Source: Macrostomum lignano | Lineage: Eukaryota | NCBI GenBank assembly: GCA_002269645.1 | Contig: NIVC01003747.1 | Coordinates: 1-54,886, forward strand | DNA: 54,886 nt | Direction: 5' to 3' | In this document: positions 7,201 to 52,150 of the stretch, piece after piece | Position numbering within the stretch: the stretch's first letter is position 1 | How the letters are laid out: every line of letters starts with the position of its first letter | Made by a program: the position numbers and the translations under genes | The notes under the pieces: model-generated | What the model saw: only the letters and a program-made list of their open reading frames with translations | The model's database searches: none | Told to the model about the DNA's origin: nothing

Positions 7201-7276
7201 TTCTCGTAGCTCTGCTAATAAAATTTAATTATCCTTTTCAGAAGTGAAAAAGAATATTTCTCTTTTCTCTCTTCAG

Positions 7277-11622: not shown

Positions 11623-11779
11623 TCTGTCTTCTGTCTTAATACTAAAACTGGTGCGTTGTTTGTCTGTGTGTGTGTGTGTTTGTTGGATATCTCTCTATCT
11701 ATCTATATATACTAAAGTTGACGCGTTGTTTGTCTGTCTGTCTGTCATTTCGACAACTCCTCCTTGAATAGTGGCAACT

Positions 11780-11818
<39 letters not shown>

Positions 11819-14380
11819 CTCTATCTCTTCTCTCTCTCTTAATACTAAAGTTGGTGCGTTGTTTGTCTGTTTGTGTGATACACATCTCCTCCTAGACGAC
11901 TTGCAAGTCAGCGTTGAAACTTATATGGGAACACTGCAAATTTTTCGAGGATGGCAGTGGGCTATTTCAATTTTTTATTTTCACGTCTTAAGATCCCTAA
12001 AAAAGCAGAAGTAGTAAAACAATAGGGGAATATGAACATCTTGCGTAATTTACAATTATTGCGCCACAACAGCCGGCCTATCTGTGCAGTGTATTCTTTC
12101 AACTGAAGGGGGTAAGCTGGGCCGGTTGACATCAATTTTTAGCGATTGCGCCACAACTGTGTGCACTGAGAACTTACCAAACCCCCCTGTGTTGAGGGTG
12201 CTGGGGCGGCAGTGGAATTCAATGAATAAACTTGCAAGCCTTTTTAGCAGGCAGTGCACGTATGCGTACACTCGATAGTTCAATGCTTTAAATTGGGATA
12301 TTTCAAACGCCAACTGTTCCTCGAGTTTTGAACTCTGAGAGAAGAGACTCATATTGCTGGAAAGATCTTTTAATGCTGACTTCGAGGATATAAGTTGTTT
12401 GCTTTAAATATGAAAGCAAAAAGCAAAGCAAAAGCAAAGACGATATTTCAATACTTTTAACTCTCTGCAAAGATTGTACTCATTTTACGGGTTCAATGGG
12501 GGTTCGACCGACACCCCAACAGTTAGGGGGGGGGGGGGTTGAATTTCTAACCTTCACTGCGTATTGGAAGGGGTCGGTCGCTGTGTATTGGAGGGTTGAT
12601 TTAGATTGCGCAATTTTTTTTTCTAATTTTACCGAGACTGATACTGAATGACTATGAAATTGGTTGCGCATTCAACTGATTCAATTGGTTCAATTTTTTT
12701 ATCGGCGCCTTTCAACACGCTGCTGTGTGTAGCTCTAACCCTAACCCTAACCCTAACCCTAACCATTGAATCCTGGGAGTATATTCCCTTTGACGGAGAA
12801 AATTTCGATTGAGTCCAGTTTCACGGAGAGAATTTCAATGGTTTTCAGTTTCTTGGAGATGATTTCTGTCTTGCGGAGAGGATTTCGATGGTTTTCAGTT
12901 TCACGGAGAGGATTTCTGTTTCGTGGAGAGAATTTTGATGTATTTCTGTTTTACGGAGACAATTTTGATGGATTTTAGTTTCACGCAGAGGATTTCCTTG
13001 GAGTTCAGTTTCCCGGAGAGGATTTCTGTTTCGTGGAGAGAATTTTGATGTATTTCTGTTTTACGGAGACAATTTTGATGGATTTTAGTTTCACGCAGAG
13101 GATTTCCTTGGAGATCAAGAGAGAGAGAAGAGAGAGGAGAGATGAGACAGGAGACGGTAGAGAGGAGAGGGGAAAGATGAGAGAATAGAGATGAGAAAAT
13201 AGAGATGAGAGCGCAGAGAGAAGAGATGAGAGATTGGAGATTATTGATAAGAAAGTAAGAGTAGAGATGAGAGAGGAGATAAGAGCAGAGAGAAGAGATT
13301 ATATAAAGGAGCAAAGAGGAGAGAGTAGATAGGAGAGTCTCAGTCTGGACCATGGCAGTCAATTTTTGCAAACAGGGAAAACATGCTATGATATTTCAGA
13401 GGTTTTATGGAGGATTTTGAAGATTTTTTGACGTAGACCCAAACAATTAAAAAGCATATTTTTATAGACCAGTTTCATAGTCTTGATTGACTGAAATTTG
13501 ATAGAGATAATATTTTTTAAATTGATGGATTGTAGCTTGAAGGAGATGATACACGCTTGATTGCAGTTTAATGGAGAGGATTTTGATGATACATGTATCT
13601 GTTTCATAGAGAGGATGAAATGGCTAAATGAAAGGGATTAGAGAAAAGAGAAAAGGAAACAGTAGATAAAATATTAGATGAAAGAGAACATGAAAAGAGA
13701 GAATTAAAAGGGACAGATTAGAGAAAAGAAAAAGAGAATAAAGGCGAGAGAAGAGATGAGGGAATTGAGAGGAGAGAGGAGAGGGGGTACGAGAGGAGAA
13801 AGAGGAGACAGGAGGGAGTAGAGCCGAAAGACGAGAGAGAAGAGATAAATGAGTAGAGATGAGGGGAGGGAGAGGAGAGAGAAGCGAGAGGATAAGGGAG
13901 AGAGGAGAAGGGAGAAAGTAGAGTGATGAGAGAGCAGAGAGGAGATAAAGGAGAGGAGAGAGAAGAGATAAAAGAGGAGAGAGAAAAAAGTAGTGAGGAG
14001 AAAGAAGAGAGTAGATATGAGAGCGCAGAAAGGAGAGATAAGAGAGTAGAGATGAGAGATGGGAGAGATGAGATGAGAGAGATGAGATGAGAAATAATAG
14101 ATAAACGAGCAGATGAGAGCAGAGAGGAGATAGGAGAGATTAGAGATGAGAGAGCAAAGAAGAGAGAGGGACAGACGACAGTCTCAGTCTGGACAATGGC
14201 AGGCAGTCAATTTTTGCAAACAGGTAAAACAACATGGTTTTTGGGAGGTTAATAGAGGATTTGGAGAGGATTTGGACGATGGGATTCATGTCATTGGATT
14301 CAGCTGATGGATTTCAAGGAATGAAATTCTGGCGATGGGAGTTCTATCCCCTTACTCCGCCAACGGAGGAGTTGGCCTCG
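11623..14380 (+). mobile_element. Helitron unit U1 (type A ends), preceded by two truncated 5' stubs
   Basis: 5' ends start at 11623, 11690 and 11780. CCCTAA tract at about 12736-12764. 3' end is ...GGAGGAGTTGGCCTCG. Confidence 0.85.
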
Positions 14381-15956
14381 CTTAATACTAAAGTTGGTGC
14401 GTTGTTTGTCTGTTTGTGTGATACACATCTCCTCCTAAACGACTTGCAAGTCAGCGTTGAAACTTATATGGGAACACTGCAAATTTTCCGAGGATGGCAG
14501 TGGGCTATTTCAATTTTTTATTTTCAAATTTTAAGATCCCTAAAAAAGCAGAAATCGTAGAACAATAGGGGAATATGCCCATCTTGCGTAATTTGCAATG
14601 ATTGCGCCACAGCAGCTGGCCTATCTGTGCAGTGTATTCTTTCAGCTGAAGGGGTGTAAGCTGGGCCGGTTGACATCAATTTTTAGCGATTGCACCACAA
14701 CTGCGTGCACTGAGAACTTAACCAAACCCCCCTGTGTTGATGGTGCTGGGGCGGCAGTGGAATTCAATGAATAAACTTGCAAGCCTTTTAGCAGGCAGTG
14801 CACGCATGCGTACACTCGATAGTTCAATGCTTTAAATTGGGATATTTCAAACGCCAACTGTTCCTCGAGTTTTGAACTCTGAGAGAAGAGACTTATATTG
14901 CTGGAAAGATCTTTCAATGCTGACTTCGAGGATATAAGTTGTTTGCTTTAAATATGAAAGCAAAAAGCACTGCATTCAAGAAGAGATTTCCATACTTTTA
15001 ACTTTCTGCAAAGATTGTACTCATTTTACGGGTTCAATGGGGTTCGACCGACCCCCTAACAGTTGGGGGGGGTTGAATTTCTTACCTTCACTGCGTATTG
15101 GAAGGGGTCGGTCGCTGTGTATTGGAGGGTTGATTTAGATTGCGCAATTTTTTGTTAACTTTTACTGAGACTGATACTGAATGACTGTGAAATCGGTTGC
15201 GCTTTCAATTGACTCAATTGGTTCAGTTTTTTATCGGCGCCTTTCAACACGCTGCTGTGTGTAGCTCTAACCCTAACCCTAACCCTAACCCTAACCATTG
15301 AATCCTGAGAGTTTATTCCTTTTGACCGAGAAAATTTCGATTGAGTCCAGTTTCACGGAGAGAATTTCAATGGTTTTCAGTTTCTTGGAGAGGATTTCTG
15401 TCTTGCGGAGAGGATTTCGATGGTTTTCAGTTTCACGGAGAGGATTTCTGTTTCGTGGAGAGAATTTTGATGTATTTCTGTTTTACGGAAACAATTTTGA
15501 TGGATTTTAGTTTTACGCAGAGGATTTCCTTTGAGTCCATTTTCACGGAGACGATTTCTGTTTCGCGGAGAGGATTTTGATGGTGTTCAGTTGCACGGAG
15601 ACGATTTCTGTTGCGCGGAGAGGATTTCGATGGTGTTCAGTTTTGCGGTGAGGAGTTGGATGATTTTGCGGTGAGGAGTTGGATGATTTTGCGGTGAGGA
15701 GTTGGATGATTTTGCGGTGAGGAGCTGGATGATTTTGCGGTGAGGAGTTGGATGATTTTGCGGTGAGGAGTTGGATGATTTTGCGGTGAGGAGTTGGATG
15801 ATTTTGCGGTGAGGAGTTGGATGATTTTGCGGTGAGGAGTTGGATGATTTTGCGGTGAGGAGTTGGATGATGGGATTCAGTTGGTGGATTTCAGGGAATT
15901 GAATTCCGGTGATGGGAGTTCTTCCCCTTCCTCCTCCGAAGGAGGAGTTGGCCTCG
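14381..15956 (+). mobile_element. Helitron unit U2 (type A)
   Basis: 5' CTTAATACTAAAGTTGGTGCG; 3' CTCCTCC-GAA-GGAGGAG-TTGGCCTCG; no GA-rich block. Confidence 0.88.
15641..15870. repeat. 23-bp tandem repeat x10 (TTTTGCGGTGAGGAGTTGGATGA) inside U2
   Basis: Exact 23-bp period over 230 bp, nearly invariant copies. Confidence 0.95.
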
Positions 15957-18696
15957 TATCTATATATACTAAAGTTGACGCGTTGTTTGTCTGTCTGTCT
16001 GTGTGTCTGTCTGTCATTTCGACAACTCCTCCTTGAATAGTGCCAACTCAGCGTTGAAACTTATATGGGAAGATTGGAAATTATCCGAGGTCGGCTATAG
16101 GCTATTTTAATTCTGAAATTTTAATTTCTAAGATCCTCAAAAAAGCAGAAAACGGCGGTCTTGACCTTTGATAATCTTAATTGTCCCCTCTTTCTGCTTG
16201 GAGCTGAAAATTTGCATGAATTTCAAGTGATTGCGCCACAACTTTTCCCTATCTCTGCAGTGTATTTTCTCTCCAGTGGGGGGATGGGGCGTTCTAAATG
16301 GCTGCCTGTGTACAATCGGACCCTGGCTCACTGGCTGACTGTATAGACAATTGCGCAAAGATTTGTGTTCTAATTTTCAATAGGCAGCCCTGTGATTTTG
16401 TTGAACGTTGAAATTCAATGCATAAACTTGCGGGCCTCTTTAGCAGGCAGTGAACGTACAATCGATATTTCAATGCTTTAAATCAGAAAGTTTCAAACGC
16501 AAACTGTTGCTTGAGTTTTTAACTTTGAGAGAAAAAATTTATATTGCTGGAAAGAACTTGCAAAGCTGATTTCAGGGATATAAATTGTTTGCTTCAAATA
16601 TGAAAACTAAAAGCTCTGCATTGCAAAAACTATTTCCATACTTTAAACTTTCTGCAAAGATTGTACTCATTTTGGCGAGAGGTGAGAGATAAAGTTGGGG
16701 GTTTCGACTTCCAACTGGCGCTGTGTATAGGAAGGGGGTCAGTTGCTTTGTATTGGAGGGTTGATTTAGATTGCGCAATGTTTTTGTTAACTTTAACTGA
16801 GACTGATACTGACTGACTGTGAAATCGGTTGCGCAATGAATTGATTCAATTAGTTCAATAGTTTATCAGTGCCTTTTAACACGAAGCTGTGCGTAGTTCT
16901 AACCCTAACCCTAACCCTAACCAATGAATCCGGAGAGTTGAGTTGTTTGACGGAAAAAATTGATTGAGTCCAGTTTAGCGGAGACGATTTCAATGTTTTA
17001 ATTTTGACAAAGAGGATTTCTGTTTCGTGGAGAGGATTTCGATGGTGCTCAGTTTCACGGAGAGGATTTTGATGATGTTCAGCTTCATGGAGAGGATTTC
17101 TGTTTCGCGGAGTTAAATTTATGATTTATTTCTGCTTTATGGAGACGATTTTGATAGATTTAAGTTTCAAGGAGAGGATTTCGAAGGTGTTCAGTTTCAC
17201 GGAGAGGATTTCGAAGGTGTTCAGTTTCACGGAGAGGATTTCGAAGGTGTTCAGTTTCACGGAGAGGATTTCGATGATGTTCAGCTTCACGGAGAGGATT
17301 TCTGTTTCGCGGAGATAATTTATGATTGATTTATGTTTTATGGAAACGATTTTGATGGATTTAAGTTTCAATGAGAGGATTTCGAAGGAGTCCAGTTTCA
17401 CGGAGAGGATTTCGATGGTTTTCAGTTGCACGGACAGGATTTTTCTGCTTCGCGGAGAGGATCTTGATGGATTTGGCATCTTCAATCAGTCAGAGAAGAG
17501 AGTAAAGAGAAGAAAAGAGAAGAGAGATGAGATGATAGAAAACAGAGTAGAAATGAGTGGAGAGATTAGACATGAGAGATGGGAGAGAAGAGGGGAGTAA
17601 GGCGGGAACGAAGAGGGAGAGAGAAGAGGAGAGAGGAGATGAAGGGAGAGGATATGAGAGAGGAGATATGAGATAGTAGAGAGGAGACAGGAGCGAAAAG
17701 AAAGGAGGGATAAGAGCGTACAGAGGCGAGGAGAGAAGAGAGGAAAGAGAGGAGAGAGGTGAGAGGTGAGAGGAGAGAGATGAAAGATCAGAGATCAGAG
17801 ATTTAAGAGAAGAAAGTAGTGAGGAGAAAGAAGAGGGTAAAGATGAGAGTGCAGAGAGGAGAGAAACGAGAGGAGACAGGTGGTAGAAAGGAGTGTAAAA
17901 AACAGGAGATAAGAAAGGAGAGGGTGAGAGTGAGAGCATATAGGAAAGTGTAAAAGGGGAGCAGAGGAGAGAGAATAGATAAGTGAGTAGAGAAGAGATA
18001 TGAGAGAGGAGAGAGGAGAGATTAGAGAAGAGATGAGGGGAGATAAGAGGAGAGAAGAGGGAATGGAGAGGAGAGAAAAGAGAGGAGAGGAGACAGGTGA
18101 TGCAGTAGAAAGGGAAGAAAGATGGTAGATAAGAAAGGAGAGGGTGAGAGCGTATAAGAGATACGAGAAATGAAAGCAGAGAGAGGAGAGAAAAGGTGAG
18201 ATAGAAAGTAGAGCGGAGACGATAGGTAAGTGAGTAGATATGAGATATTAGAGGGGAGAGAAAAGGGGAGAGATAAGAGAGAAGATAGGAGAGTAGACAG
18301 GAGAGGGTACAGACGAAAGGCGAGGGAGAAGAGATAAATAAGGGAGTAGAGATGAGATATGAGAGAGAAGAGATAAGCGAGAAGAGTAGGAATAGAGGAG
18401 AGAGAGAAGCGAGAGAAGGGAGAGAGGAGGGAGAAGAGAGATGAAAGATCAGAGATGAGAGAGATGAAAGTGTAGACAGGAGTAATTAGTGAGGAGAAAG
18501 AAGAGAGTAAAAATAAAAATTAGAGCGCAGGGCGCAAGAGATGAGAGATGGGAGTTGATAGATTGTAGAAGATTTGGAGATGATTTGGAAGATGGGATTC
18601 AATTCATGGAATTTCAGCTGATAGGAGTTCTTCCCCTTCAGAATTCCGGTGATGGGAATTCTTCCCCTTTCTCCTCCAGAGGAGGAGTTCCACTCG
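15957..18696 (+). mobile_element. Helitron unit U3 (type B)
   Basis: 5' ..ATACTAAAGTTGACGCG; GA-rich block at about 17490-18560; 3' hairpin-TTCCACTCG. Confidence 0.88.
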
Positions 18697-20765
18697 TATA
18701 TACTAAAGTTGACGTGTTGTTTGTCTGTGTGTGTGTGTGTGTGTGTCATTTCGACAACTCCTCCTTGAATAGGGGCAACTCAGCGTTGAAACTTATATGG
18801 GAAGATTGGAAATTATCCGAGGTCGGCTATAGGCTATTTTAATTCTAAAATTTTAATTTCTAAGATCCTCAAAAAAGCAGAAAACTCAAATCTTGACCTT
18901 TGATAATCTTATTTGTCCCCTCTTTCTGCTCGGAGCTGAAAATTTGCATGAATTTTAAGTGATTGCGCCATAAAATTTTGCTACCTTGGCAGTGTATTTT
19001 CTCTCCAGTGGGGGGATGGGGCGTTCTAAATGGCTGCATGTGTACAATCGGACCCTGGCTCACCGGCTGACTTTATAGACAATTGCGCAAAGATTTGTGT
19101 TCTAATTTTCAATAGGCAGCCCTGTGATTTTGTTGAACCTTGAAATTCAATGCATAAACTTGCGGGCCTCTTTAGCAGGCAGTGAACGTACACTCGATAT
19201 TTCAATGCTTTAGATCAGAAATTTTTAAATGCTAACTGTTGCTAGATTTTTGAACTTTGAGAGGAGAGACTTATATTGCTGGAAAGAGCTTGCAACGCTG
19301 AGTTCGGGGATATAAGTTTCTTGCTTTAAATATTAAAACTAAAAGCACAGCATTTAAAAAAACGATTTCATACTTTTAACTTTTTGCAAAGATTGTACTT
19401 ATTTTTGCGATAGGTCAGAGATAAATTTGGGGGGTTCAATTGCCAATTCAATTGGGGGTCGGGCGCTGTGTATTGGACGGTTGATTTAGATTGCGCAATC
19501 TTTTTGTTAACTTTACTGAGACTGATTCTGACTGACTGTGAAATCGTTTGCGCCATCAATTTGTTTTATTATCTGTGCCTTTCAATAGGCTGCCCTGTGT
19601 AGTAGCCGGCCTGTGTAATGAATGAATAGACTTGCGAGCCTCTTTGGTAGGCAGTGAACGTACACTCGATGTTTCAATGCTTTAAAACGGGAACTTTAAA
19701 ACGCTAACTGCTCTTCGAGTTCTAAACTTTAAGAGAAGAGACTTATACTGCTGAAAAGATCTTGCAACACTGAGTTCGAGGGTGTAAGTTTTTTGCTTTA
19801 AATATGAAAAGAAAAGCACAGCATTTAAAAAACTATTTCCATACTTTTACTTTCTGCAAAGATTGTACTCAGTTTTGCGAGACGTAATAGATAAAGTTGG
19901 GGGGAGGGTTCAACTTCTCACTGCTGCTGTGTATTGGAGGGTTGATTTAGATTGCGCAATCATTTTGTTAACTTTAACTGAAACTGATACTGTCTGACTG
20001 TGAAATCGGTTGCGCAATGAATTGATTCAATTAGTTCAATATTTTAATCAGTGCCTTTTAACACGAAGCTGTGCGTAGTTCTAACCCTAACCCTAACCCT
20101 AACCCTAACCAATGAATCCTGAGAGTTGAGTTGTTTGACGGAAAAAATTCGATTGAGTCCAGTATAGCGGAGACGATTTCAATGTTTTAATTTCAACAGA
20201 GAGGATTTCTGTTTCGTGGAGAGGATTTCGAAGGAGTCCAGTTTCACGGAGAGGATTTCGATGGTTTTCAGTTGTACGGACAGGATTTTTCTGCTTCGCG
20301 GAGAGGATCTTGATGGATTTGGCATCTTCAATCAGTCAGAGAAGAGAGTAAAGAGAAGAATGAAAAGAGAAGAGAGAGAGAGAGGGTTTAGAGAGACGAT
20401 AGATAAGTGAGTAGAGATAAGATATGAGAGGAGAGAAGAGGGAGAGATAAAAGAGAAGAGAGGAGACACGAGACAGGAGAGGGTACAGACGAAAGACGAG
20501 GGAGAAGAGATAAATAAGGGAGTAGGGGTAGAGATGAGAGAGAGGAGAGAGAAGAGAGTCACGATAATAGCAGAGAGGAGAGAGGAGATATGAGAGACGT
20601 GAGAGTCTTTGAGCTATGGTCTTTGAAAGGTTTTGTAAAGAATTTGGAGACGATTTGGAAGATAGGGTTCAAGACATGCAATTTCAGTTGATGGATATTT
20701 CAGGGAATAGAATTCCGGTGATGGGAGTTCTTCCCCTTTCTCCTCCGAAGGAGGAGTTCCACTCG
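18697..20765 (+). mobile_element. Helitron unit U4 (type B, two internal modules)
   Basis: Type B ends; the internal module occurs twice. Confidence 0.88.
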
Positions 20766-20800
20766 TCTATCTCTATCTATATATACTAAAGTTGACGCGT

Positions 20801-20832
<32 letters not shown>

Positions 20833-41700: not shown

Positions 41701-41866
41701 TGAGAGTCTTTGAGCTATGGTCTTTGAAAGATTTTGTAAAGAATTTGGAGACGATTTGGAAGATAGGGTTAAAGACATGGAATTTCAGTTGATGGATATT
41801 TCAGGGAATGGAATTCCGGTGATGGGAGTTCTTCCCCTTTCTCCTCCGAAGGAGGAGTTCCACTCG
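38724..41866 (+). mobile_element. Helitron unit U14 (type B, three internal modules)
   Basis: Type B ends; module region matches U5. Confidence 0.88.
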
Positions 41867-44153
41867 TCTATCTATACTAAAGTTGACGCGTTGTTTGTCT
41901 GTCTGTCTGTCTGTGTGTGTGTGTGTCATTTCGACAACTCCTCCTTGAATAGTGGCAACTCAGCGTTGAAACTTATATGGGAAGATTGGAAATTATCCGA
42001 GGTCGGCTATAGGCTATTTTAATTCTAAAATTTTAATTTCTAAGATCCTCAAAAAAGCAGAAAACTCAAATCTTGACCTTTGATAATCTTATTTGTCCCC
42101 TCTTTCTGCTCGGAGCTGAAAATTTGCATGAATTTTAAGTGATTGTGCCATAAAATTTTGCTACCTTGGCAGTGTATTTTCTCTCCAGTGGGGGATGGGG
42201 CGTTCTAAATGGCTGCATGTGTACAATCGGACCCTGGCTCACCGGCTGACTTTATAGACAATTGCGCAAAGATTTGTGTTCTAATTTTCAATAGGCAGCC
42301 CTGTGTTTTGTTGAACCTTGAAATTCAATGCATAAACTTGCGGGCCTCTTTAGCAGGCAGTGAACGTACAATTGATATTTCAATGCTTTAAATCAGAAAG
42401 TTTCAAACGCAAACTGTTGCTCGAGTTTTTAACTTTGAGAGAAAAAATTAATATTGCTGGAAAGAACTTGCAAAGCTGATTTCAGGGATATAAATTGTTT
42501 GCTTTAAATATGAAAAGAAAAAGCACAGCATTGAAAAAACTATTTCCATACTTTTAACTTTCTGCAAAAATTGTACTCAGTTTTGCGAGACGTAATAGAT
42601 AAAGTTGGGGGGAGAGTTCAACTTCTCACTGCTGCTGTGTATTGGAGGGTTGATTTAGATTGCGCAATGTTTTTCTTAACTTTAACTGAGACTGATACTG
42701 ACTGACTGAGAAATCGGTTGCGCAATCAATTGATTCAATTGGTTCAATTTTTTATTTGAACACGCAGCTGTGTGTAGCTTTAACCCTAACCCTAACCCTA
42801 ACAATAACCCTAACCAATGAATCCTGATATTTATTTTTTTTGACGGAGAAAATTTCGATTGAGTCCAGTTTAAAAGAGAGAATTTCGATGGTTTTCAGTT
42901 TCACGGAAAGGATTTCGAAGGAGTCCAGTTTCACGGAGAGGATTTCGATGGTTTTCAGTTGCACGGACAGGATTTCTGCTTCGCGGAGAGGATCTTGATG
43001 GATTTGGCATCATCAATCAGTCAGAGAAAAGAGTAAAGAGAAGAATGAAAGCAGAAGAGAGATGAGATGATAGAAAACAGAGTAGAAATAAGTGGAGATA
43101 TTAGACATGACAGATTGGAGAGAAGAGGGGATTTAGGCGGGAACGAAGAGGGAGAGAGAAGAAAAGAGGAGAGAGGAGAGAAAATAGATTAGGGATAAGA
43201 GCGTACAGAGAAAATAGAAGAGAGGGGAGAGTAGAGGAGAAAGAAAGAGTGAGATGAGGGGATGAGGGATGAGAGAGGAGGGGAGACAGGAGAGACAAGA
43301 AAGGAGAAAAGAGGGGAGAAAGGAGAAAGGAGAGAGTAGAGACGAAGGACCAGTTAGAAGATATAAATACGGTAGTAGAGATGAGAGGAGAGATAGGAGA
43401 GAGAAGCGAGAGAAGAAGCGAGAGGAGAAGAGAAAGAGGAGAGAGGAGAGAGATGAAATAGATAAGAGAGTTAAGAGAGGAAAGTAGTGAGGAGAGGAGA
43501 GATGAGAGATGCGATGATAAGAGATGAGTGAGAACATAAGAGAGAAGAGAGAAGAGATTAGAGAAGAGAGGGGAGAAGATAAAAGGAGCAAGGAGAGGAG
43601 AAAAGATACAATGGAGAGGATAGAAAAGAGAGAAGAGAAGAGACAGGGAAAAGTGGAAAGGAGGAAAGAAAGATTGGAGACAAGTAAGTGGAGTGTGAGA
43701 GCGTATATGAGATATGAGAAATGAGAGCAGAGAGGAAAGAAAAGAGAAGAGAGAGAGGGTTAAGAGAGACGATAGATAAGTGAATAGGGATGACATATAA
43801 AAGAGGAGAGAAGAGGGAGAGATAAGAGATAAGAGAGAAGAGAGGAGACAAGAGACAGGAGAGGGTACAGACGAAAGACGAGGGAGAAAACATAAATAAG
43901 GGAGTACGGGTAGAGATGAGATGAGAGAGAGGAGAGAGAAGAGAGTCACGATAATAGCACAGAGTGGAGAGAGTAGATATGAGAGACGTGAGAGTCTTTG
44001 AGCTATGGTCTTTGAAAGGTTTTCTAAAGAATTTGGAGACGATTTGGAAGATAGGGTTCAAGACATGGAATTTCAGTTGATGGATATTTCAGGGAATGGA
44101 ATTCCGGTGATGGGAGTCCTTCCCCTTTCTCCTCCGAAGGAGGAGTTCCACTC
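41867..44153 (+). mobile_element. Helitron unit U15 (type B)
   Basis: Type B ends; the terminal G is missing at the junction (CACTC|TCTTAAT). Confidence 0.88.
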
Positions 44154-44928
44154 TCTTAATACTAAAAGTGGTGCGCTGTTTGTTTGTCTGTATGTGTGTT
44201 GCAATTTTTCTCCTAGACTACTGACAAGTCAGCGTTGAAACTTATATGGGAAAACTGCAAATTTTCCGGATTGGGTTTATAGCTATTTTAATCTTTAGGT
44301 TTTATATTTTAAGATCCCTAAAAAAGCAGAAAACTGATTTCCTAACCTTCTTTGGCCCTTCTGTGGCCACTCTGCCTCTCCATTGGAGGGGTTGCAGTCT
44401 GTTTGTAAAAATAGCCACCCCTACCTCCGCCCGCGGGTCGCTGTGTTTTGGGGGGGTGGGTGCGCGTGTTCCGCGTTCAATGCAAAACCCCCCCGCGTGT
44501 TGGGGGGTTCAATTAAATTTAACGATTCCCCGGAATGGGGGTTTGGGCTTGGGCTGAGTGTACGTAGCAGTTGTACAGTGTAAGCAGATAGATAGGACTG
44601 CCGAGATTCAATTGGTTTTATTGGCGCCTTGAGTCAGTCCATTGCATTGGCTGGGCAGTGGGGACAGACTGGTGGGGCTTAAGGTTCTTTTTTATTGATT
44701 TTTACTGACAAAAAATTGTGTACACTGACTGGGCCTTTCTTAAGGAGGCCAATTTTCAATTCTCTCTAGAGATTTTTCTCCAATCTGCTGAATCTGGTGA
44801 AATTTCTATTTGCTTATTCCTTCTATTCTTTTCTATTCTTTGCTTATTATCACCATCTACTTTCTATTTGCCTACTTTTGCTTTGTTTATTTTTGCCTGT
44901 TCATTGTTTATTGTATACGCGAAAGAAA

Positions 44929-47900
44929 ATGCCAAAACGCGGAAGTATTTCCCGTTCTACACGTGCTGCATCGGCAGCTAAAAAGCGCAGGGCCTCGGAG
45001 ACACCCGAGGAGCGCCAGCATCGCCTTGAAGCGAATCGACGGCGCACAGCCGAAAGCCGCGAGGCTGAAGGCGAGGTGAAGCGCCAGAATCGCCTTGAGG
45101 CGAATCGACGGCGCACAGACGAAAGCCGCGAGGCTGAAGGCGAGGTGGAGCGCCAGAATCGGCTCGACCACGACCGGCTGCGTGCTGCCGAAAGCCATGA
45201 AGCAGAGGCCGAAGCGGTCCATCAGCTTTGCTTGGAGGCGCAGCGGCAGCGCACAGCCGAAAGCCGTGAAGCCGAGGACGAGACGGTCCATCAGCATCGC
45301 CTGGAGGCGCAGCGGCAGCGCCAGAACCGGAATCGCGCGGCTGAGTCCGCTGACGACCACAACCGCCGCCTAAACGCACAGGCAGAGTGGCGCCGAGACA
45401 GGTAGGGGTTCCTATATATTTTTATTTTACATTCTGCTATTTTTATATTATTATATATTATTTTCTGAGACAATTAAACTCTGCATACAGAACTGGATTC
45501 TCAAGGAGAAGTCATGCCTTATGATTAAAATGCTTTTTCTTTCATTGTCACAGACTGCTGGAGCTGGCACACCGGCCACATGTGCTCGGTCGCATGGACC
45601 GCCAATGCCCGCACTGCAGCGCGCTACGCTGGAAGGACGAGCCAGCTAGCATTTGCTGTCACGCTGGAAAGGTGAGTCCATTTTTTATTTTAGTTTACTT
45701 TAATTGCTGCTTCATTATTGCTTTTTATACTAATCAATGTATACAGTATAAAACCTCTGACCACCAATGGAGTCATAGAAAATTGCGTGATGTGCTGCTG
45801 AAAGTCATTAATCCAACTTTAATCCAACTCAGACCGTCCTGGAGCCCCGCCGTGACCCCCCTGATGTCCTGAAGCGGCTTCTGACTGGCCAGCACCCAGA
45901 CAGCTCTCAGTTCCTGAAGGACATCAGGAAGTACAACGGCGCGCTCCACATGACGTCGCTCGGTGCCAAGCAGCGTGAGCAGCCCGGCTGGAACCCGAGC
46001 TTCATCCTCAATGGTCAGGTGCACCACAAGATCGGCAGTCTCTTGCCGGATCCGGGGATGAGGCCAGGTTCTGCCAGGTCTTTTTTGTGGACCAGGAGCT
46101 GCAAACCCGGCTGCAGTGGGCCACCGGACTGAACGGTCGTGTGCTGGAAGAGCTGCAAGCCATGCTGCATGCGTGCAACGGCTACGTGCGCAGCCTCAAG
46201 TCCGCCGTTGACTTGCTCCGCAACGACCCTCAGCTGCAAAGCGCCAAGGTCGTCATCAACCCTGATGCCCGTCCATCAGGGGAGCATGCCAGACGCTTCA
46301 ATTTGCCCGAGTGCAGTGAAGTCGGCATCCTGACGGACCTTGACGATACCGAAGGCGCAGCCCAGACGCGACGGCGGGACGTGATTTTGCGTCTGAGGGG
46401 CGGTGGTGAGTTCTGCATCCCGAAATTATGTTAAACTTTTTTTATTTGTTAATACAGGCGTTTAAATCATTTTCCTAAAAAGACTCAGACTTTTGCGCTT
46501 CTTTATGTGATAATGCACATGTATCGCTTAAATATTGAAGCAATTTATTATCTCTTGCTTTTGTGTGAATTGGAAGACTCAAGCATTCTGTTTCATTAAT
46601 TTAGTTGCTACTTATTTGCATTTAAAAATGAGAATGCGCCATTCATCATTTTTCATTCACAGGCCTCCAGAGCATCTGTGACACCCACCGCTCCTACGAT
46701 CCCTTGGAGTACGTCCTGCTGTTCCCATTTGGTGAGGACGGCTGGAGCATCGGACTCAAGCAGGATCGTGGCATCACTATCATGAAGTACTATGCCTTCA
46801 TGATCCAGGTGCGTCCAGGCCAGTTCAATAGCCTGCTGTACGGTCGCCGGCTCTTCCAGCAGTACCTGGTAGACCAGGCTGCTAAGATCGAGTCCGAGCG
46901 ACTTACGTACATCCGACTGCACCAAAAGGATCTGGTGTCGGAAAGTCTTCGGGGTCTCCGAGACGCGCTGCACGAGGACGACGGCAGGCCGGAGGAAGTC
47001 GGGAAGCGTGTCATTCTTACTTCCAGCTACGTGGGAGGTCCACGGTACCGTCTGGAGCGTCAGCAGGATGCCATGGCGTATGTTCACGCCTTTGGCCGCC
47101 CAGACCTGTTTCTGACGATGACATGCAACCCGAAGTGGCCGGAAATTCTGGCCGAGCTGCTTCCAGGACAGACTGCCGTCGATCGGCCGGACATTACCGC
47201 CCGGGTGTTCGAGCTGAAAAAGAAGGCCTTCCTAAACAGGCTGAAGAGTCTGTTTGAAGATACTCTGGCTCGAGTCTGCTCGCTGGAGTACCAGAAGCGA
47301 GGCAAGTGTGAAATTTGTATGAACTTTTGAAAATTTTAACATTTAAATGTTGCATTAACTGTCGCCTCAATAATTTCGTAAATTTCAATAGAGTTTTTAA
47401 TTTTATCTACATCCAGGTCTTCCCCACGTGCACGCGCTGCTTTGGCTGGCGAACAAGCTGAAGCCGGATCAGTACGACGCCGTCATCAGCGCGGAGATCC
47501 CGGACCCTGTCGCCGACGCCGACCTGCATCAGCTGGTGGCGGAGAACATGCTGCACGGTCCCTGTGGACAGCAGCTCAATTCTGCCGCGGCGTGCATGGA
47601 GAAAGGCAGGTGCAGCAAGCGCTACCCGAGGGAGTTCCTGGCCGCCACGAAGGTGGAGGAGGATGGCTACCCGCATTACTGCCGCAGATCCGTCGAGATG
47701 GGCGGCTTCACGGTGACGAAGCTCGCAAAGCTGCGCGGCGGTCAGAGGGTGATGTTCACCTTTGACAACCGCTGGGTGGTGCCGTACTGCCCAGCGCTGC
47801 TGCGCGAGTTTCGCTGTCACCTGAATGTCGAGATCTGCGCGACAGTTCGGGCCATCAAGTACGTGGTGAAGTACATCACCAAGGGTAGCGACATGGCAGC

Positions 47901-50703
47901 ATACCAGATCCGCAAGGAGTCGGCGGCTGCTGCGAATGCCAGCGCTGATTCGGCCACTGAAGGACCACTGGCGATCGCCGGTCCGTCCGCGTCGACTGGG
48001 ACTGCTGCTGCTGCTGCTGCGACTTCCGCAAAGCGACGCAAGATCGACGAGATCGACGAATACCTACTGGGCAGGTTCATCGGTCCAATGGAGGCGGTTA
48101 ACACCATCCTGGGCTTCGAGGTGCACAGCCGATACCCGCCTGTGATCAGGCTCGCGGTTCATCTTAAGGACGAGCAGCGGGTCTTCTTCACTGACGAGAC
48201 GGCTCAGGCTGTTGCTGCTACGCCCAAGGCCACGACTTTGACCGCCTTCTTCGATGTGAGTTTTGCAGACAAAGTGCAATTTGTTAAATTTATTCCTCCT
48301 TCCTGTTTCTACCCGCCCACTTTCCTGTTCCTACCCGCCCAGCTCTGTCGCCATGACGAAATCGCCCGAGGTCTGCTGTACCAGGAGGTGCCCCGGCACT
48401 TCACCTGGGACCCCAGGGCGCACCAGTGGCATCGCGCAGGTCGCGGCCGAGTCGCTGCTGATCAGCCAGCCGATGTTCTGACGACCAGCAACATCGGCCG
48501 CATCTACACAGTCAGTCCTCGGATGGGCGACTGTTTTTACCTGCGCCTGCTGCTGGTGAATGTGCGCGGCCCGACTTCGTTCGAGGCTCTGCGCACTGTT
48601 GACGGAGTCCTGCTGCCGACCTTCAAGGCCGCCTGCCAGGCTCGCGGACTGCTGGAAGACGACAGGCACTGGCAGCTGTGTCTGTATGAGGCTGCCCAGA
48701 CGCGGATGCCTGCTGCTCTGCGCCGACTTTTTGCCGCAATTTTGGCTCACGGCGATCCCAGCGACCCCGCCAAGCTCTGGGAGGAGTTTTCCCGCGAGAT
48801 GGCTGGTGACCTGCTGCATCAGGGCTTGAGCGCCGAGGCTGCTAGGGCCGAAGTGCTGCGGTCGCTGCAGAAGCGGCTGGAGCGGATGGGCGGATCCGAG
48901 CTGTCTGCCTACGGCCTTCCTGAACCACCGGCAGAAGCGGATCAAGTAAATGAACTCACTGCTATGCACACTGACTGTTGATATTTTTAACCTTTAATAG
49001 CTTACTGATGACAGCTTCTTCTCAATATCCAGACTCGGCTTCTTTCTGACTGCCTGCCGACGCCGCAAGAAGCTGCTGAGCTGCAGTCTGAAGTGGATGC
49101 GCTGGTCGCTACCCTGACTGACGAGCAGCGAGCTGTCTTCGAGGCCGTGCAGTCCAATCTGACGGCCGGTGGCGGCGGGCTGCACTTCATTGACGCTCCT
49201 GGAGGCACAGGCAAGACGTTCCTGCTCACGCTTCTGCTGAAGTCGGTTCGAGCAAGGCGTCAAATTGCTGTTGCCGTCGCGTCATCGGGCATCGCGGCGA
49301 CTATTCTTCCCTGAGGTCGGACCGCCCATTCGATGTGAGTTTTGTGTCTGCATCAATCATTTTATAAACGGTTCATTTTTAAGCACAGAAAGGCATCCTT
49401 TTAATCCTTTTAATTTATCCTCAAAATTGAAAATCCTCGCGATACCTGCCTACAGGTTCAAGATCCCCGTCTGCGCTGTACGGCAGGACAGCGCCTTCTG
49501 CTCCATCGGCAGGCGGAGCAAATTGGCGGAGATTCTGCGGAACGCCCGCCTCATCGTGTGGGACGAGGCTCCGATGACGCACCGCAAAGACCTCGAGATC
49601 GTCGAGCGTACTCTGCGGGATTTGCTGCACGGTGGGCAGCCGTTCGGGGGAGCGCTGCTGGTGCTGGCTGGCGACTTTCGCCAGTTGCTTGCTGTTGTGC
49701 CCGGAGGGACGCAGGCCAACACGATTGAAGCCTGCCTGAATCGGTCGGTGCTGTGGCCGCACTTCAGGCAGCACCAGCTAACAAGGAATCTGCGGCTGGA
49801 GGGCGGCTCGGCTCTCCAAAGCTACGCGGATTTTCTTATGCAGGTGAGAATCTATGGAGTTTCTATGCTCTCATTAAGCATGCAAATTGAAGGAAAAAAT
49901 TGTAAAATTTTATTCCACTTTTTCACCGTCAGGTTGGCAACGGGGAGCTGCCAGAGGACGTTGAGGGCATGGTCTCCTTGCCTAGCGAGATCCTTCTGCC
50001 CGAGGACACAACCACTGAGCAGCTCATTCGGCATGTTTACCCGTCCTTTGAGCCGAGTGCGCAGCGTGACCAGATGTTCGCGGAGCGGAGCATCCTGGCG
50101 CCACTCAACAGGACGGTGGACGAGGCCAACGCCGCCTGCTTAGCGCTCTTCCCCGGTGAGAGTCGAGTCTACTTATCTGTTGACTCGATTCCGAATGACG
50201 ACACGGCAGCCACCAATTTTCCACCGGAGCTGCTGAACCGGCTGGACCCCAGCGGTATGTCGCATCACCGACTGGAGCTGAAGGTCGGCATGCCGGTCGT
50301 CATGATGCGGAATCTGGACCCACCGCTGCTGTGCAACGGGACTCGGCTACTGCTGCGTGAACTGCGTGACAACGTCCTGCTAGCGGAGGTAACCACCGGC
50401 GTCTACCGTTCGCGGCAGGTGTTCATCCCGCGGATCCCGCAGGAGCCGAGTCCGACAGAGGTTCCGTTTGTTTTCCGCCGTCTGCAGTTCCGGATCCGGC
50501 CGTGCTTCGCCATGACCATCCACAAGAGCCAGGGCCAGTCGCTGGGCACCTACGCCGTCGACCTGACGACGGCTTGCTTTCAGCATGGCCAGCTCTACGT
50601 GGCTCTGAGTCGTGCGCGGAGTGCCGATGGCGTTAAAGTTCGGGCTCCAGGCGGACGGACGCGGAACATCGTGCTGCGCCAGCTTATTGGCAAGCAGAAC
50701 TGA
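44929..50703 (+). pseudogene. Helitron RepHel transposase (HUH Rep + Pif1-family helicase), 9 exons, about 1568 aa when restored. Exons: 44929-45401, 45554-45671, 45833-46405, 46663-47301, 47417-48255, 48343-48945, 49033-49334, 49456-49843, 49933-50703
   Basis: Zn-finger CPHC..CCHAGK; Rep motifs PDLFLTMTCNPKW, EYQKRG|LPHVH and KYVVKYITKG; helicase motifs DAPGGTGKTF, IVWDEA, GDFRQL, FAMTIHKSQGQSL and HGQLYVALSR. Splice phases are mutually consistent, and the exons sum to 4706 bp (4707 with one base restored). One -1 frameshift at about 46065 and a TGA at 49312-49314. Confidence 0.93.
44998..45390 (+). repeat. 69-bp (23-aa) coding repeats, 5-6 copies, STPR-like, in the RepHel N-terminus
   Basis: ETPEERQHRLEANRRRTAESREA / EGEVKRQNRLEANRRRTDESREA and further copies, with a 23-residue period. 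Confidence 0.75.
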
Positions 50704-50747
50704 TTAGACTCAATTGAATTAACAGACTCAAATGACAGAAATATAAT

Positions 50748-51290
50748 ATGAGTGACATATTATAAGAGTGAGTGATAAATTATGAGAGTGAGAGAAAAAT
50801 TATCAGAGTGAGAGACAAATTATGAGAGTAAGTGAAAAATTATGAGAGTGAGTGACAAATTATGAGAGTGAGTGACAAATTATGAGAATAAATGACAAAT
50901 TATGAGAGTAAGTGACAAATTATGAGAGTGAGGGACAAATTATGAGAGTAAGTGACAAATTATGAGAGTAAGTGACAAATTATGAGAGTGAGTGACAAAT
51001 TATGAGAGTGAGTGACAAATTATGGGAGCGAGTGGGTGAAAAATTATGAGAAGGAGTGGTTAATCATGAGAGGGAGTGAAAAATTATGAGTGACAAATTT
51101 GAGAGCGATAATACTTATGAGGGTGCAAAATTCAGGATGTCATATTGAGTGTGACGAATTATGAGAGTGATAAATTATGAGAGACAAATTATGAGTCAAA
51201 AAAATTTTGAGAGTGACGAATTCACGAGCGAAAATACTTATGCCACATTGAGTGCCAAATTGAGAGTGCGACAAATAATGAGACTGATAA
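50748..51290. repeat. 20-bp tandem repeat (AAATTATGAGAGTGAGTGAC) downstream of the RepHel stop, decaying toward the right
   Basis: Regular 20-bp period at about 50775-51025, degenerate afterwards. Confidence 0.92.
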
Positions 51291-52127
51291 ATCTTTTAAC
51301 ATAAACTATTAGGTAGTGGCAAAACTGTTTCTTGATAGAGTTGCTCATATAAGGGGAGCTTCTAAGAATGCTCAGGCTCCAAGCAATTTAGATTCAATTG
51401 CCGTACTTATTTTTTCTGAATCTTTTTAATGTACAAAGTAGCCGTTCGTAATTATTTATGTATTTTGTTACACGTGTAATATTAACGGCCAATTCACACA
51501 TTTAGTATTGTCAGTTAAGTTATTAGATTTCTTCCACTTTCTCCCCACCTTTGCTTGCACCCCTATTATAACACAATTGCATTGCTTTAATAAAAAATAT
51601 ATGCCATACTGTACTCGGGTGCGCAGGATTCAGAATACAAACGAGCCAGTCGATTGATAGGCTATTAGTAAACATCATAAATAATGAAAAGGTATTACAT
51701 GCACATAAATTCTGAATTAACAATTATGCAATACTTAGCCAATGACCCGTGCTTATACTATCCCTTTAATTTGGTCGTTTCCTGCGCACCCCCCAATGAT
51801 GTCTTTGAATTAGTTTTTTAATATATTTAACGGAGACACAGAAGTATAACTACCTGATAGGAATGGATGCGTTAGTTAGATTTCTAATTGCGCGTTGTGT
51901 ACTGAAAGTGTAGGTCGCTGTGTACGTATTGGAGGGTTGATTTGGATTGCGTAACCTTATAGTTAATTTATAATGAGCCTAACACCGACTGCCTGATAAA
52001 TTGATTACGTCATAAATGCTTTGTGTGACTCTTACTCTGACTGACTTAGCTCATGAGATTCAGCTGATGGATTTCAGGGAATGGAATTCCGGTTATGGGA
52101 TTCCGGTGATGGGAGTTCTTCCCCTTT

Positions 52128-52150
52128 CTCCTCCGGAGGAGTTGGCCTCG
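52128..52150 (+). terminator. Helitron 3' terminal palindrome and CTCG end
   Basis: CTCCTCC/GGAGGAG at 52128-52141, a 5-nt spacer, then CTCG at 52147-52150. The same motif, with a 3-4 nt loop, ends the other units (imperfect in U1). Confidence 0.85.

What the first reader, a model, noticed from the sequence alone, without database searches (positions are those of the whole stretch)
11623..52150. A 40.5-kb head-to-tail Helitron train occupies a single A|T site, and its empty site is in the same window
Removing 11623-52150 joins ...CATGTATAGTA to TACTGTAATA.... This is the reverse complement of the intact left-arm sequence at 9641-9670, with the junction at 9657|9658 in the centre of the palindrome AGTATACT. 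The 16 units therefore behave as one Helitron-type insertion: A|T target, no TSD, 5' TC, 3' hairpin plus CTCG. All units face the same way, abut with no host DNA between them, and the only coding element is last. Tandem Helitrons are known, but a heterogeneous 16-unit train with an internal empty-site control is unusual.
Basis: partly seen in the sequence, partly recalled or inferred. Interest (0 to 1): 0.92.

Follow-up and report, generated by a model that had tools for sequence, protein, structure and literature searches.

The report
Sixteen Helitrons stacked at one site
A 40.5-kb stack of sixteen rolling-circle transposons (Helitrons), all facing the same way and ending in the only protein-coding copy, fills one A|T site in one arm of an inverted duplication in a Macrostomum-type flatworm genome; such stacks are known from other organisms, so this is a clean example, not a new kind of element.

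Summary
Removing 11623-52150 (40,528 bp) rejoins the right arm of a large inverted repeat. The rejoined sequence matches the uninterrupted left arm across 9657|9658 (AGTA|TACT). There is no target-site duplication, only a 1-bp T ambiguity.

The insert has 16 head-to-tail units on the + strand. Each ends in a 7-bp hairpin followed 9 nt later by CTCG (one ends CTC). Nothing but Helitron sequence lies between units. The first 15 are non-coding. The last (44154-52150) encodes a RepHel protein with intact Rep motifs, a frameshift and a premature TGA.

Its closest relatives are Macrostomum lignano Helitrons. One M. lignano contig shows the same layout: non-coding units followed by a RepHel-bearing unit.

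Whether all 40.5 kb arrived in one event is not shown. There are 20 5' cores for 16 3' ends. A 2,448-bp period (99.7% identical copies) arose by unequal exchange. Units are mosaics, and unit order differs between the two loci I could compare. I favour stepwise stacking at resident Helitron ends plus unequal crossing-over. En bloc transposition is not excluded.

Tandem and multi-termini Helitrons are already described in bats, plants, Drosophila, fungi and cnidarians. This is a new member of a known kind, of moderate interest.

The parts
11623..52150 (+). The whole Helitron train, 40,528 bp: 15 non-coding units followed by one RepHel-coding unit, inserted between A (11622) and T (52151).
9641..9670 (.). 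Unfilled target site in the left arm. The junction equivalent is 9657|9658, within AGTA|TACT.
6793..9989 (.). Left arm of the inverted repeat. It carries a 31/60-bp minisatellite at 8728-9426 and a weak reverse-transcriptase-like ORF.
9990..11284 (.). Non-palindromic loop, 1,295 bp, with a weak mariner-transposase-like ORF at 10578-11006.
11285..11622 (.). Inner piece of the right arm, 338 bp, ending at the insertion point.
   Evidence: repeat I3: 327 nt, 99% complementary.
52151..54886 (.). Outer piece of the right arm. It runs off the end of the window.
   Evidence: repeats I1, I2, I4.
11623..14380 (+). Unit 1 (2,758 bp, 3' TTGGCCTCG). It opens with two stacked 5'-end fragments of other subfamilies (11623-11690 and 11691-about 11785) and a long TC/TCTA leader. 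Its own 5' core is at 11840.
14381..15956 (+). Unit 2 (1,576 bp). The 5' end starts CT (the leading T is missing); 3' TTGGCCTCG.
15957..30929 (+). Units 3-8, the 'GACGCG / TTCCACTCG' subfamily. Boundaries: 18696|18697, 20765|20766, 23605|23606, 26052|26053, 28501|28502. Includes the 2,448-bp-period duplication, 21732-28547.
30930..36417 (+). Units 9-12, with 'GGTGCG' 5' ends. Units 9-11 are short (1.1-1.3 kb); unit 12 is 1.9 kb. Boundaries: 32154|32155, 33274|33275, 34557|34558. Unit 12 holds a truncated internal 3' end at about 35616-35671 and ends in TTCCACTCG.
36418..44153 (+). Units 13-15, 'GACGCG / TTCCACTCG' subfamily. Boundaries: 38723|38724, 41866|41867. Unit 15 ends CACTC, lacking the final G.
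44154..52150 (+). Unit 16 (7,997 bp), the coding Helitron. 5' end TCTTAATACTAAAAG; 3' palindrome CTCCTCCGGAGGAG followed by TTGGCCTCG.
45830..50703 (+). RepHel gene. Exons lie at about 45830-46404, 46665-47303, 47416-49332 (with two short introns inside), 49457-49846 and 49930-50703. Lesions: loss of 1 bp in a G run at about 46055, and an in-frame TGA at 49312-49314.
52128..52150 (+). 3' terminator of the train: palindrome CTCCTCC/GGAGGAG plus 9 nt ending in CTCG. The same module, with a 3-nt loop, closes every unit.

Best explanation
What it is (shown). This is a head-to-tail array of one Helitron family from a Macrostomum-type flatworm. Fifteen non-autonomous units of at least three subfamilies are followed by one RepHel-coding copy, which is damaged here. 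The array occupies a single A|T in one arm of a young (99.7% identical) inverted duplication. The other arm keeps the unfilled site.

How it was probably built (inferred). One element landed at the A|T first, most likely the coding copy that now sits at the 3' end. The array then grew in place in two ways.
1. Rep-mediated addition of further copies exactly at resident Helitron ends. The boundary 'host-A|TC-5' end' and each 'CTCG|T' junction are the sites that the Rep nuclease nicks anyway. A head-to-tail junction is the same substrate as the joint of a Helitron circle. An incoming strand or circle can therefore be ligated there in the same orientation with no host DNA between units. This step is inferred, not shown.
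2. Unequal crossing-over or slippage between neighbouring units. This step is shown by the 2,448-bp-period block, whose register ignores unit ends.

The purine-rich tracts and 30/50-bp repeats inside units then change length quickly. That makes the units look more different from one another than their termini are.
For: Identity as a Helitron:
- Helitron_like_N and PIF1 domains.
- Rep motifs FLTMTCNP, HVH and KYVVKYITK; Walker A motif GGTGKT.
- 5' TC, a hairpin 9 nt from the end, A|T target, no target-site duplication, no terminal inverted repeats.
- Closest proteins are from M. lignano, up to 92% identity.

Single site.

Change in place:
- 21732-26096 matches 24180-28547 at 99.7% identity, with a register that starts mid-unit and ends 46 bp into unit 8. 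Arm divergence is about 0.2-0.3%.

Repeated, independent junction formation:
- The unit 14 3' end is 99.6% identical to a 3' end on M. lignano contig L001, but the two are followed by different 5' partners.
- The unit 13 5' end is 100% identical to a 5' end of an L001 unit.
- Within the window, 5' and 3' ends reassort: units 3 and 14 have 100% identical 5' ends and different 3' ends.
- No multi-unit order is shared between the two loci.

Directionality:
- In both trains that could be examined, the RepHel-bearing unit is last and is followed by host DNA starting with T.
- Truncated 5' fragments are stacked at the left (growing) edge and at the unit 5|6 and 6|7 junctions. The two internal stacks are copies of one event.

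Published precedent:
- Circle intermediates with a precise head-to-tail joint (PMC5876387).
- Self-insertion at 5' ends and multiple 5' termini in Fusarium (PMC5148889).
Against: - Sixteen or more separate hits at one nucleotide position, while the 3.2-kb arms gained only 7 substitutions and no other insertion, require very strong end-targeting. That targeting has not been demonstrated for any Helitron.
- Internal junctions are G|T, not A|T.
- Four units start TA and one starts CT rather than TC, so the junctions are not all clean Rep products.
- Only two trains could be compared, and the 5' host boundary of the second one was out of reach.
- If arm-to-arm gene conversion is not operating, the older-looking subfamilies sit awkwardly with a young site. 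Units 1-2 and 9-12 have termini 82-95% identical to their best matches.
Confidence: 0.45

Rival explanations
1. En bloc composite transposition. A heterogeneous array that already existed elsewhere was mobilised as one 40.5-kb Helitron. Rep nicked the leftmost 5' end, read through 15 internal 3' ends and terminated at the 3' end of the coding unit. The whole strand then integrated at this A|T.
For: - One 5' end and one 3' end at one A|T, with no target-site duplication and no host DNA inside.
- The arms are 99.7% identical, while several units look older.
- 3'-end bypass is shown experimentally (PMC4778049). Maize composites with several termini are inferred to transpose whole (PMC3288121).
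- A second locus also ends in the RepHel unit, as expected if that 3' end is the effective terminator.
Against: - The 15 internal terminators look intact. The hairpin and CTCG are present, and units 1, 2, 9 and 11 share the final 3' end's GGAGGAGTTGGCCTCG. In Helraiser the hairpin acts as a terminator, and bypass rises when it is deleted (PMC4778049).
- No unit order is shared with the one other train available.
- Part of the train (about 4.9 kb) is a duplication as young as the arm divergence, with a non-transpositional register.
- The leftmost 5' end is a 68-bp fragment with an 11-nt extra leader, not a clean full-length 5' end.
Confidence: 0.28
2. Recombinational import. A single Helitron inserted at the A|T. 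A later break in it was repaired by copying from a long array of the same family elsewhere (ectopic gene conversion, synthesis-dependent strand annealing or break-induced replication). This brought in many units at once between the original ends.
For: - Units are mosaics, with 5' and 3' halves of different affinity.
- Termini are identical between loci while the interiors differ, which points to frequent exchange among arrays.
- Unequal exchange within the train is shown.
Against: No direct evidence. It needs a donor array with matching order, which was not seen. It does not explain why the coding unit is last at two loci.
Confidence: 0.12
3. Assembly artefact. The palindrome, or the join between a filled and an unfilled haplotype, is a mis-assembly. 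The 'empty site in the same window' would then really be the other allele or a paralogue. Alternatively, the unit count is wrong because of the 99.7%-identical repeats.
For: - Several arm differences are single-G indels, and the RepHel frameshift lies in a G run. Single-base indels of this kind are typical of long-read errors (my own knowledge, not checked here).
- Macrostomum genomes are repeat-rich and partly duplicated (background knowledge, not checked here).
- Units 5-7 are nearly identical.
Against: - The palindrome has a 1,295-bp non-palindromic loop.
- The arms differ in minisatellite copy number (23 versus 19), by 7 substitutions and by a 6-bp duplication. This is not what a fold-back read chimera gives.
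- Most units differ enough from one another to assemble unambiguously.
- Even if the two arms were alleles, the filled/empty comparison would still hold.
Confidence: 0.08
4. Precise loss. The train was present before the inverted duplication and so was in both arms. It was later excised exactly from the left arm.
For: None. I know of reports of somatic Helitron excision in maize, but this is from memory and was not checked here.
Against: - It needs exact removal of 40.5 kb that restores AGTA|TACT with no footprint.
- There are no direct repeats at the ends that could mediate a deletion.
Confidence: 0.03

Closest known systems
Head-to-tail / tandem Helitron arrays: Helibat in Myotis, plant arrays including Arabidopsis, HSymSHlR in Hydractinia (PMC5876387, PMC4778049, PMC11934779)
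   Same: Same orientation, 3' end abutting 5' end with no host DNA, internal repeats within units, array units of variable length. In bats, abutting insertions have empty-site support.
   Different: This array mixes at least three subfamilies and ends in a coding copy. It sits at a single mapped A|T, with the unfilled site preserved 2 kb away in the same molecule. It is not subtelomeric or centromeric as far as the window shows.
Composite Helitrons with multiple termini: maize helitron_mc2, FoHeli in Fusarium (PMC3288121, PMC5148889)
   Same: Several 5' and 3' termini lie inside one outer pair of ends. Short 5' fragments (tens of nt) are repeated ahead of a full 5' end. Self-insertion near 5' ends has been proposed.
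   Different: In maize, 99 of 100 sampled internal ('pseudo') 3' ends had lost an intact CTAG. Here the internal hairpins and CTCG are intact in 14 of 15 units. FoHeli elements are Helitron2-type with terminal inverted repeats; this family has none.
IS91 (bacterial HUH rolling-circle element)
   Same: The cited Helitron papers draw the parallel: rolling-circle transposition by an HUH Rep and a circular intermediate (PMC5148889), and concatemers in related rolling-circle replicons (PMC5876387). Terminator read-through that carries adjacent DNA, and tandem multimers, I recall for IS91/ISCR from my own knowledge and did not check.
   Different: Bacterial; no Pif1 helicase fusion (my own knowledge). 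This is an analogy of mechanism, not homology of the array.
Helitron-derived satellite DNA, e.g. DINE-TR1 in Drosophila virilis (papers listed, not read)
   Same: Non-autonomous rolling-circle elements whose internal tandem repeats expand and seed long arrays.
   Different: In those cases it is the internal repeat that becomes the satellite, and the elements are Helentron/Helitron2-type (my own knowledge). Here whole elements with both termini are the repeating unit.

Membership tests
Helitron superfamily (RepHel rolling-circle transposons) | Encodes a RepHel protein: an HUH Rep nuclease with two catalytic tyrosines, fused to a Pif1-type helicase | tested here: met
   Helitron_like_N E 2.7e-51, PIF1 E 1e-32, Pif1_2B E 2.1e-14. 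Motifs HVH and KYVVKYITK and GGTGKT. More than 100 RepHel homologues align along 45830-50727. This copy carries a frameshift and a TGA.
Canonical Helitron (Helitron1-type ends) | Inserts between A and T with no target-site duplication | tested here: met
   Comparison of filled and empty sites within the window: AGTA|TACT, with only a 1-bp T ambiguity. The L001 train is also followed by T.
Canonical Helitron (Helitron1-type ends) | 5' terminus TC | tested here: met
   The train starts TC at 11623. Eleven of 16 units start TC, 4 start TA and 1 starts CT.
Canonical Helitron (Helitron1-type ends) | 3' terminus CTRR | tested here: not met
   The terminus is CTCG in 15 units and CTC in one: C, not a purine, at the third position. 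It is a terminal variant. The superfamily assignment rests on RepHel and the other end features, not on this motif.
Canonical Helitron (Helitron1-type ends) | Short hairpin about 10 nt upstream of the 3' end | tested here: met
   CTCCTCC-N3-GGAGGAG lies 9 nt from the end in most units. Loops vary (GAA, ATC, AGA, GAAA) and the stem is shortened in unit 1. The fold is predicted in 3 of 5 minimum-free-energy structures tested and in the centroid of a fourth; in the final unit the palindrome has no loop and was not predicted. The energies are not unusual against shuffles; the evidence is the conserved position.
Helitron2 / Helentron | Asymmetric terminal inverted repeats; T|T target; (Helentron) a C-terminal endonuclease domain | tested here: not met
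   No inverted match of 7 nt or more between the first 40 nt and the last 150 nt of any unit. The target is A|T. No endonuclease domain was found in the Pfam hits; the reading frame stops at 50703 and is followed by a 20-bp tandem repeat.
Tandem / composite Helitron array | Two or more elements in the same orientation, 3' end joined directly to the next 5' end | tested here: met
   15 internal junctions of the form ...CTCG|T(C/A)..., with one CTC|TC and one CTCG|CT. No foreign DNA between units. No inverted copies.
Single-event (en bloc) composite Helitron | The same multi-unit order found at another locus with different flanks, or only full and empty alleles in a population | not testable with these tools
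   The source genome cannot be searched here. The one other train available (L001) has a different unit order. Other look-ups failed.

The most novel reading that the evidence does not exclude
Trains are built by site-specific integration of Helitron strands or circles at the 5' end or the junctions of a resident copy, which is the Rep protein's own nick site. A founder coding Helitron would then collect an ordered stack of its non-autonomous dependants upstream of itself, much like a cassette array. That would explain why the coding unit is last at both loci seen, and why truncated 5' fragments pile up at the left edge.
Probability: 0.3. Interest if true: 0.65.

Novelty: new member of a known kind. 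Interest (0 to 1): 0.4.

Why it matters
Tandem Helitron arrays are usually explained after the fact, as rolling-circle concatemers or as chance neighbouring insertions. Here both outer boundaries and the unfilled target can be read in one molecule. The units are distinguishable, and a second locus shows the same 'coding copy last' layout. The locus is therefore a good test case for how such arrays form: end-targeted stacking, read-through of many terminators, or recombination.

It also points to a young Helitron family in Macrostomum. Termini are 99.6-100% identical between loci, and this RepHel copy has only two visible lesions. As far as I know, M. lignano is a laboratory flatworm in which transgenesis is possible, so the family could be tested experimentally.

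For genome annotation, the case is a reminder that a 40-kb 'repeat region' can be a single transposon-bounded insertion.

Tried and rejected
- A protein search with the long antisense S/L-rich ORF of a non-coding unit (37632-38630, minus strand), meant to pull in more M. lignano arrays, found no hits. These ORFs are compositional artefacts of the purine tracts.
- A protein search with the C-terminal helicase ORF gave no closer M. lignano loci. The best hits were short Logan-assembly contigs at 58-66% identity and one M. lignano protein at 52%.
- Look-ups of the UniRef-only M. lignano proteins P0008 and P0003 found nothing on record.
- L002 (M. lignano) is a solo, 3'-truncated RepHel copy inside an innexin gene span, with no train upstream. 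L003 is a distant Helitron family with no train of this family. Neither helps decide how trains form.
- An early BLAST summary mixed L001 and L002, because both records sit in one file. It was redone per record. The earlier apparent 'second RepHel' in L001 was this artefact.
- No tRNA genes and no Rfam families were found in the window, so there is no sign of captured RNA genes.
- A nested-insertion explanation for the extra 5' fragments was rejected. Every 3' end is followed by a 5' end or by the host flank, never by the remainder of an interrupted element.
- Helitron2/Helentron assignment was rejected: no terminal inverted repeats, A|T target, no endonuclease domain.
- I did not scan the viral, metagenome or prokaryotic-genome collections for the termini. 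They would not be expected to hold a flatworm genome.

Full report
**1. The observation**

The window contains a large inverted repeat:
- left arm 6793-9989
- a non-palindromic loop 9990-11284
- a right arm interrupted after 338 bp (11285-11622), which resumes at 52151 and runs off the window end at 54886

I joined the 60 nt on each side of 11623-52150 and reverse-complemented the result. It aligns to 9596-9711 with one substitution, a 1-nt indel and a 6-nt indel. The join falls at 9657|9658 inside AGTATACT.

Over about 3.2 kb the arms differ by 7 substitutions and about a dozen indels. Many of the indels are single G's, and two are 59-61-bp minisatellite units.

There is no target-site duplication. 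The only positional freedom is one T, since 11623 and 52151 are both T. The inserted segment is 40,528 bp.

**2. What the insert is**

The last 23 nt (CTCCTCCGGAGGAGTTGGCCTCG) and the last 80 nt recur along the insert, always on the + strand. Reading each site gives 16 3' termini: 14380, 15956, 18696, 20765, 23605, 26052, 28501, 30929, 32154, 33274, 34557, 36417, 38723, 41866, 44153 and 52150.

Each terminus has a CTCCTCC-N3-GGAGGAG hairpin followed 9 nt later by the end. The closing sequence is TTGGCCTCG (TTGGTCTCG in unit 10) or TTCCACTCG. Unit 15 lacks the final G. Every 3' end is followed at once by a 5' end: a variable TC/TCTA-type leader, then TA(A)TACTAAAGTTG. The final 3' end is followed by the host T.

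Further checks:
- There are no minus-strand copies, and no train sequence elsewhere in the window.
- Apart from three short stretches (42, 212 and 92 bp), every base of units 1-15 recurs in other units. No host DNA separates them.
- ORFs in units 1-15 are stop-free antisense readings of roughly 1-kb purine tracts. They have no homologues.

Unit 16 (44154-52150) shares only about 200 bp at its 5' end and about 270 bp at its 3' end with the others. It encodes RepHel:
- Helitron_like_N, PIF1 and Pif1_2B domains
- Rep motifs FLTMTCNP, HVH and KYVVKYITK
- Walker A motif GGTGKT

Alignment of more than 100 homologues places exons at about 45830-46404, 46665-47303, 47416-49332 (with two short introns inside), 49457-49846 and 49930-50703. 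Two lesions are visible: loss of 1 bp in a G run near 46055, and an in-frame TGA at 49312-49314 within SSGIAATILP*GRTAHS. If the assembly is exact, this copy codes for RepHel but is probably inactive.

No terminal inverted repeats exist. The target is A|T, and no endonuclease domain is present. This is the canonical Helitron type with a variant 3' tetranucleotide, CTCG in place of CTRR.

**3.

- There are 20 5' cores for 16 3' ends: 19 found by pattern, plus the coding unit's own. The train opens with a 68-bp 5' fragment of one subfamily, then a 5' fragment of about 95 bp from another, then a long leader and the full 5' end of unit 1. Units 6 and 7 each open with a 38-46-bp 5' fragment ahead of the full one.
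- Unit 12 contains a truncated 3' end at about 35616-35671.
- The 5' dinucleotide is TC in 11 units, TA in 4 and CT in 1.
- The apparent heterogeneity has two sources. One is at least three subfamilies defined by their termini. The other is rapid length change of internal modules: a roughly 460-bp module present 1-3 times, 30/50-bp repeats, and purine tracts.
- The 250-bp termini of the commonest subfamily are 95-100% identical among units.

**4. Host and relatives**

The closest proteins are Macrostomum lignano Helitron fragments at 92%, 82%, 74% and 65% identity. Other animals are at about 40%.

Three M. lignano loci were retrieved:
- **Contig NIVC01004741.1 (L001).** It carries the same family in the same layout. 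Non-coding units end at 386, 5186 and 7642. A RepHel-bearing, internally deleted unit follows (7643-11392), ending GGAGGAGTTGGCCTCG|T. Unrelated DNA follows that.
- **L002.** A solo, truncated RepHel copy with a roughly 70-nt CT-rich 5' leader and no train.
- **L003.** A distant family.

Termini are nearly identical between the window and L001. The unit 13 5' end is 100% identical to an L001 5' end, and the unit 14 3' end is 99.6% identical to an L001 3' end. The window therefore most likely comes from M. lignano or a very close relative, and the family is young.

**5. One event or many?**

Points that favour one event:
- The single outer pair of ends at one A|T.
- The near-identity of the arms.

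Points against taking that at face value:
- The segment 21732-26096 matches 24180-28547 at 99.7% identity, with a 2,448-bp period. Its register starts mid-unit and ends 46 bp into unit 8. This is the mark of unequal exchange, not transposition. It is as young as the arm divergence, so about 4.9 kb may have been added in place.
- Units are mosaics. Units 3 and 14 have identical 5' ends but different 3' ends. The same 3' end type is followed by different 5' partners in the window and in L001, and no multi-unit order is shared. Junctions are therefore made repeatedly at different loci.
- Fourteen of the 15 internal terminators look intact, and units 1, 2, 9 and 11 share the final 3' end's GGAGGAGTTGGCCTCG. 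In the Helraiser system the hairpin is a terminator, and bypass rises when it is deleted (PMC4778049). Fifteen successive bypasses would be remarkable.
- Three of the roughly 19 arm differences lie within 30 bp of the insertion point, where 0.36 would be expected (Poisson P about 0.006). This fits insertion-associated repair. It equally fits reduced arm-to-arm gene conversion next to a large heterology, in which case arm identity would not date the insertion. The local sequence is also AT-rich and repetitive, so this signal is weak.

**6. Most likely mechanism**

I favour seeding by one element, followed by growth in place. The host-A|TC boundary and the CTCG|T junctions are the Rep nuclease's own substrates. 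A head-to-tail junction is equivalent to the joint of the Helitron circle intermediate (PMC5876387). Integration at those points would give same-orientation, gap-free stacks of whichever family members are active. This is my inference and is not shown.

It accounts for three things:
- the coding unit being last at both trains seen
- the different unit orders at different loci
- the truncated 5' fragments at the left edge

Published bat data include insertions in which one Helitron's 5' end abuts another's 3' end, with empty-site support (PMC4778049). Fusarium data include multiple 5' termini and proposed self-insertion at 5' ends (PMC5148889).

Unequal crossing-over is directly visible.

Rivals, with my weights:
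- En bloc transposition of a pre-formed array, 0.28. It is supported by the single boundary pair and by maize composites (PMC3288121).
- Recombinational import from another array, 0.12.
- Mis-assembly, 0.08.
- Precise excision from the left arm, 0.03.

**7. Comparison with what is known, and novelty**

All of the following are already in the literature:
- Multiple tandem insertions in Myotis, Drosophila, rice and maize (PMC5148889).
- Arrays in Arabidopsis and in Hydractinia (PMC11934779).
- Composite Helitrons with multiple termini (PMC3288121).

My literature search found no description of Helitron arrays in Macrostomum. Four papers mention both terms; in the one I opened, the Helitron mentions concern C. 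elegans.

What is uncommon here is the combination of a mixed-subfamily train, a coding copy at the 3' end, and the unfilled target preserved in the same molecule. I rate it a new member of a known kind. Interest is moderate (0.4), not the 0.92 first proposed.

**8. Limits**

- The source genome could not be searched, so donor copies, other alleles and a census of trains are missing.
- Only one other train could be examined, and its 5' boundary lay outside the retrievable flank.
- Read support for the junctions and the palindrome cannot be assessed from the sequence alone.

Noticed in passing
window 46052-46056 and 49312-49314: The RepHel gene of the last unit has two disabling lesions. One is a 1-bp loss in a G run (a frameshift between the exon parts 45830-46057 and 46054-46404). 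The other is an in-frame TGA inside the helicase motif SSGIAATILP*GRTAHS. The Rep catalytic motifs are intact. The frameshift could be a homopolymer sequencing error.
   Followed up: partly
window 9647-9684, with counterparts at 11596-11622 and 52151-52162: Differences between the palindrome arms cluster at the insertion point. A 6-bp TACATG duplication, a TA-repeat indel and an A/T substitution all lie within 30 bp of 9657|9658 (0.36 expected, P about 0.006). Possible causes are repair at insertion, reduced arm-to-arm gene conversion next to the heterology, or a locally mutable AT-rich sequence.
   Followed up: partly
window 8728-9426 and 52381-52953: A G-rich 31/60-bp minisatellite (GGGGAGAGCGGCGGAAAGCAGCGGAGCTGTT) sits in both arms but with different copy numbers, about 23 versus 19. 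This argues that the palindrome is real and not a fold-back read artefact.
   Followed up: partly
window 5491-6795: A C-rich 21/42-bp minisatellite (about 62 copies of CCCTCCTACCCTCTAGCCCCA) abuts the outer end of the detectable left arm. The window ends before it can be seen whether the arm extends into it.
   Followed up: no
window 934-1221, 10578-11006, 7367-7630: Other transposon debris. A mariner-type HTH_48 ORF lies left of the palindrome (E 1e-10). A weak, sub-threshold Transposase_1 match lies in the loop ORF (E 0.17). A weak RVT_1 match lies in an arm ORF (E 0.22). The palindrome is therefore made of older repeat DNA.
   Followed up: partly
window about 12000-44000 (e.g. 13100-14180, 17490-18520, 37550-38560): Each non-coding unit carries a roughly 1-kb tract that is almost pure purine (GA-rich, with 14/21-nt periodicity) on the + strand. 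This gives a GC skew of 0.14-0.47 across the train and long stop-free antisense ORFs. The + strand carries the 5'-TC...CTCG-3' ends, so on the rolling-circle model (my inference) it is the strand that would be displaced. No function was tested.
   Followed up: no
window 50749-51090, 45011-45321, 15641-15871: Short tandem repeats inside elements. A 20-bp repeat (x17) lies just after the RepHel stop codon. A 69-bp coding repeat (x4, RQNRLEANRRRTAESREAEGE-like) lies in an upstream ORF of the coding unit. A 23-bp repeat (x10, 99% identical) lies near the 3' end of unit 2.
   Followed up: no
window units 3, 13, 14 versus L001 1-386 and 5187-5436: Termini are 99.6-100% identical between the window and an M. 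lignano contig, while unit interiors are only about 80-88% identical. The 5' and 3' halves of units also reassort. This suggests very recent activity, frequent exchange among arrays, or both.
   Followed up: partly
L002 6100-6190 (M. lignano NIVC01000059.1): A solo RepHel copy of a sister subfamily has a roughly 70-nt CT-rich leader before the TATACTAAA core. It lies within the span of an annotated innexin gene. The 5' leader of this family therefore behaves like an expandable microsatellite.
   Followed up: no
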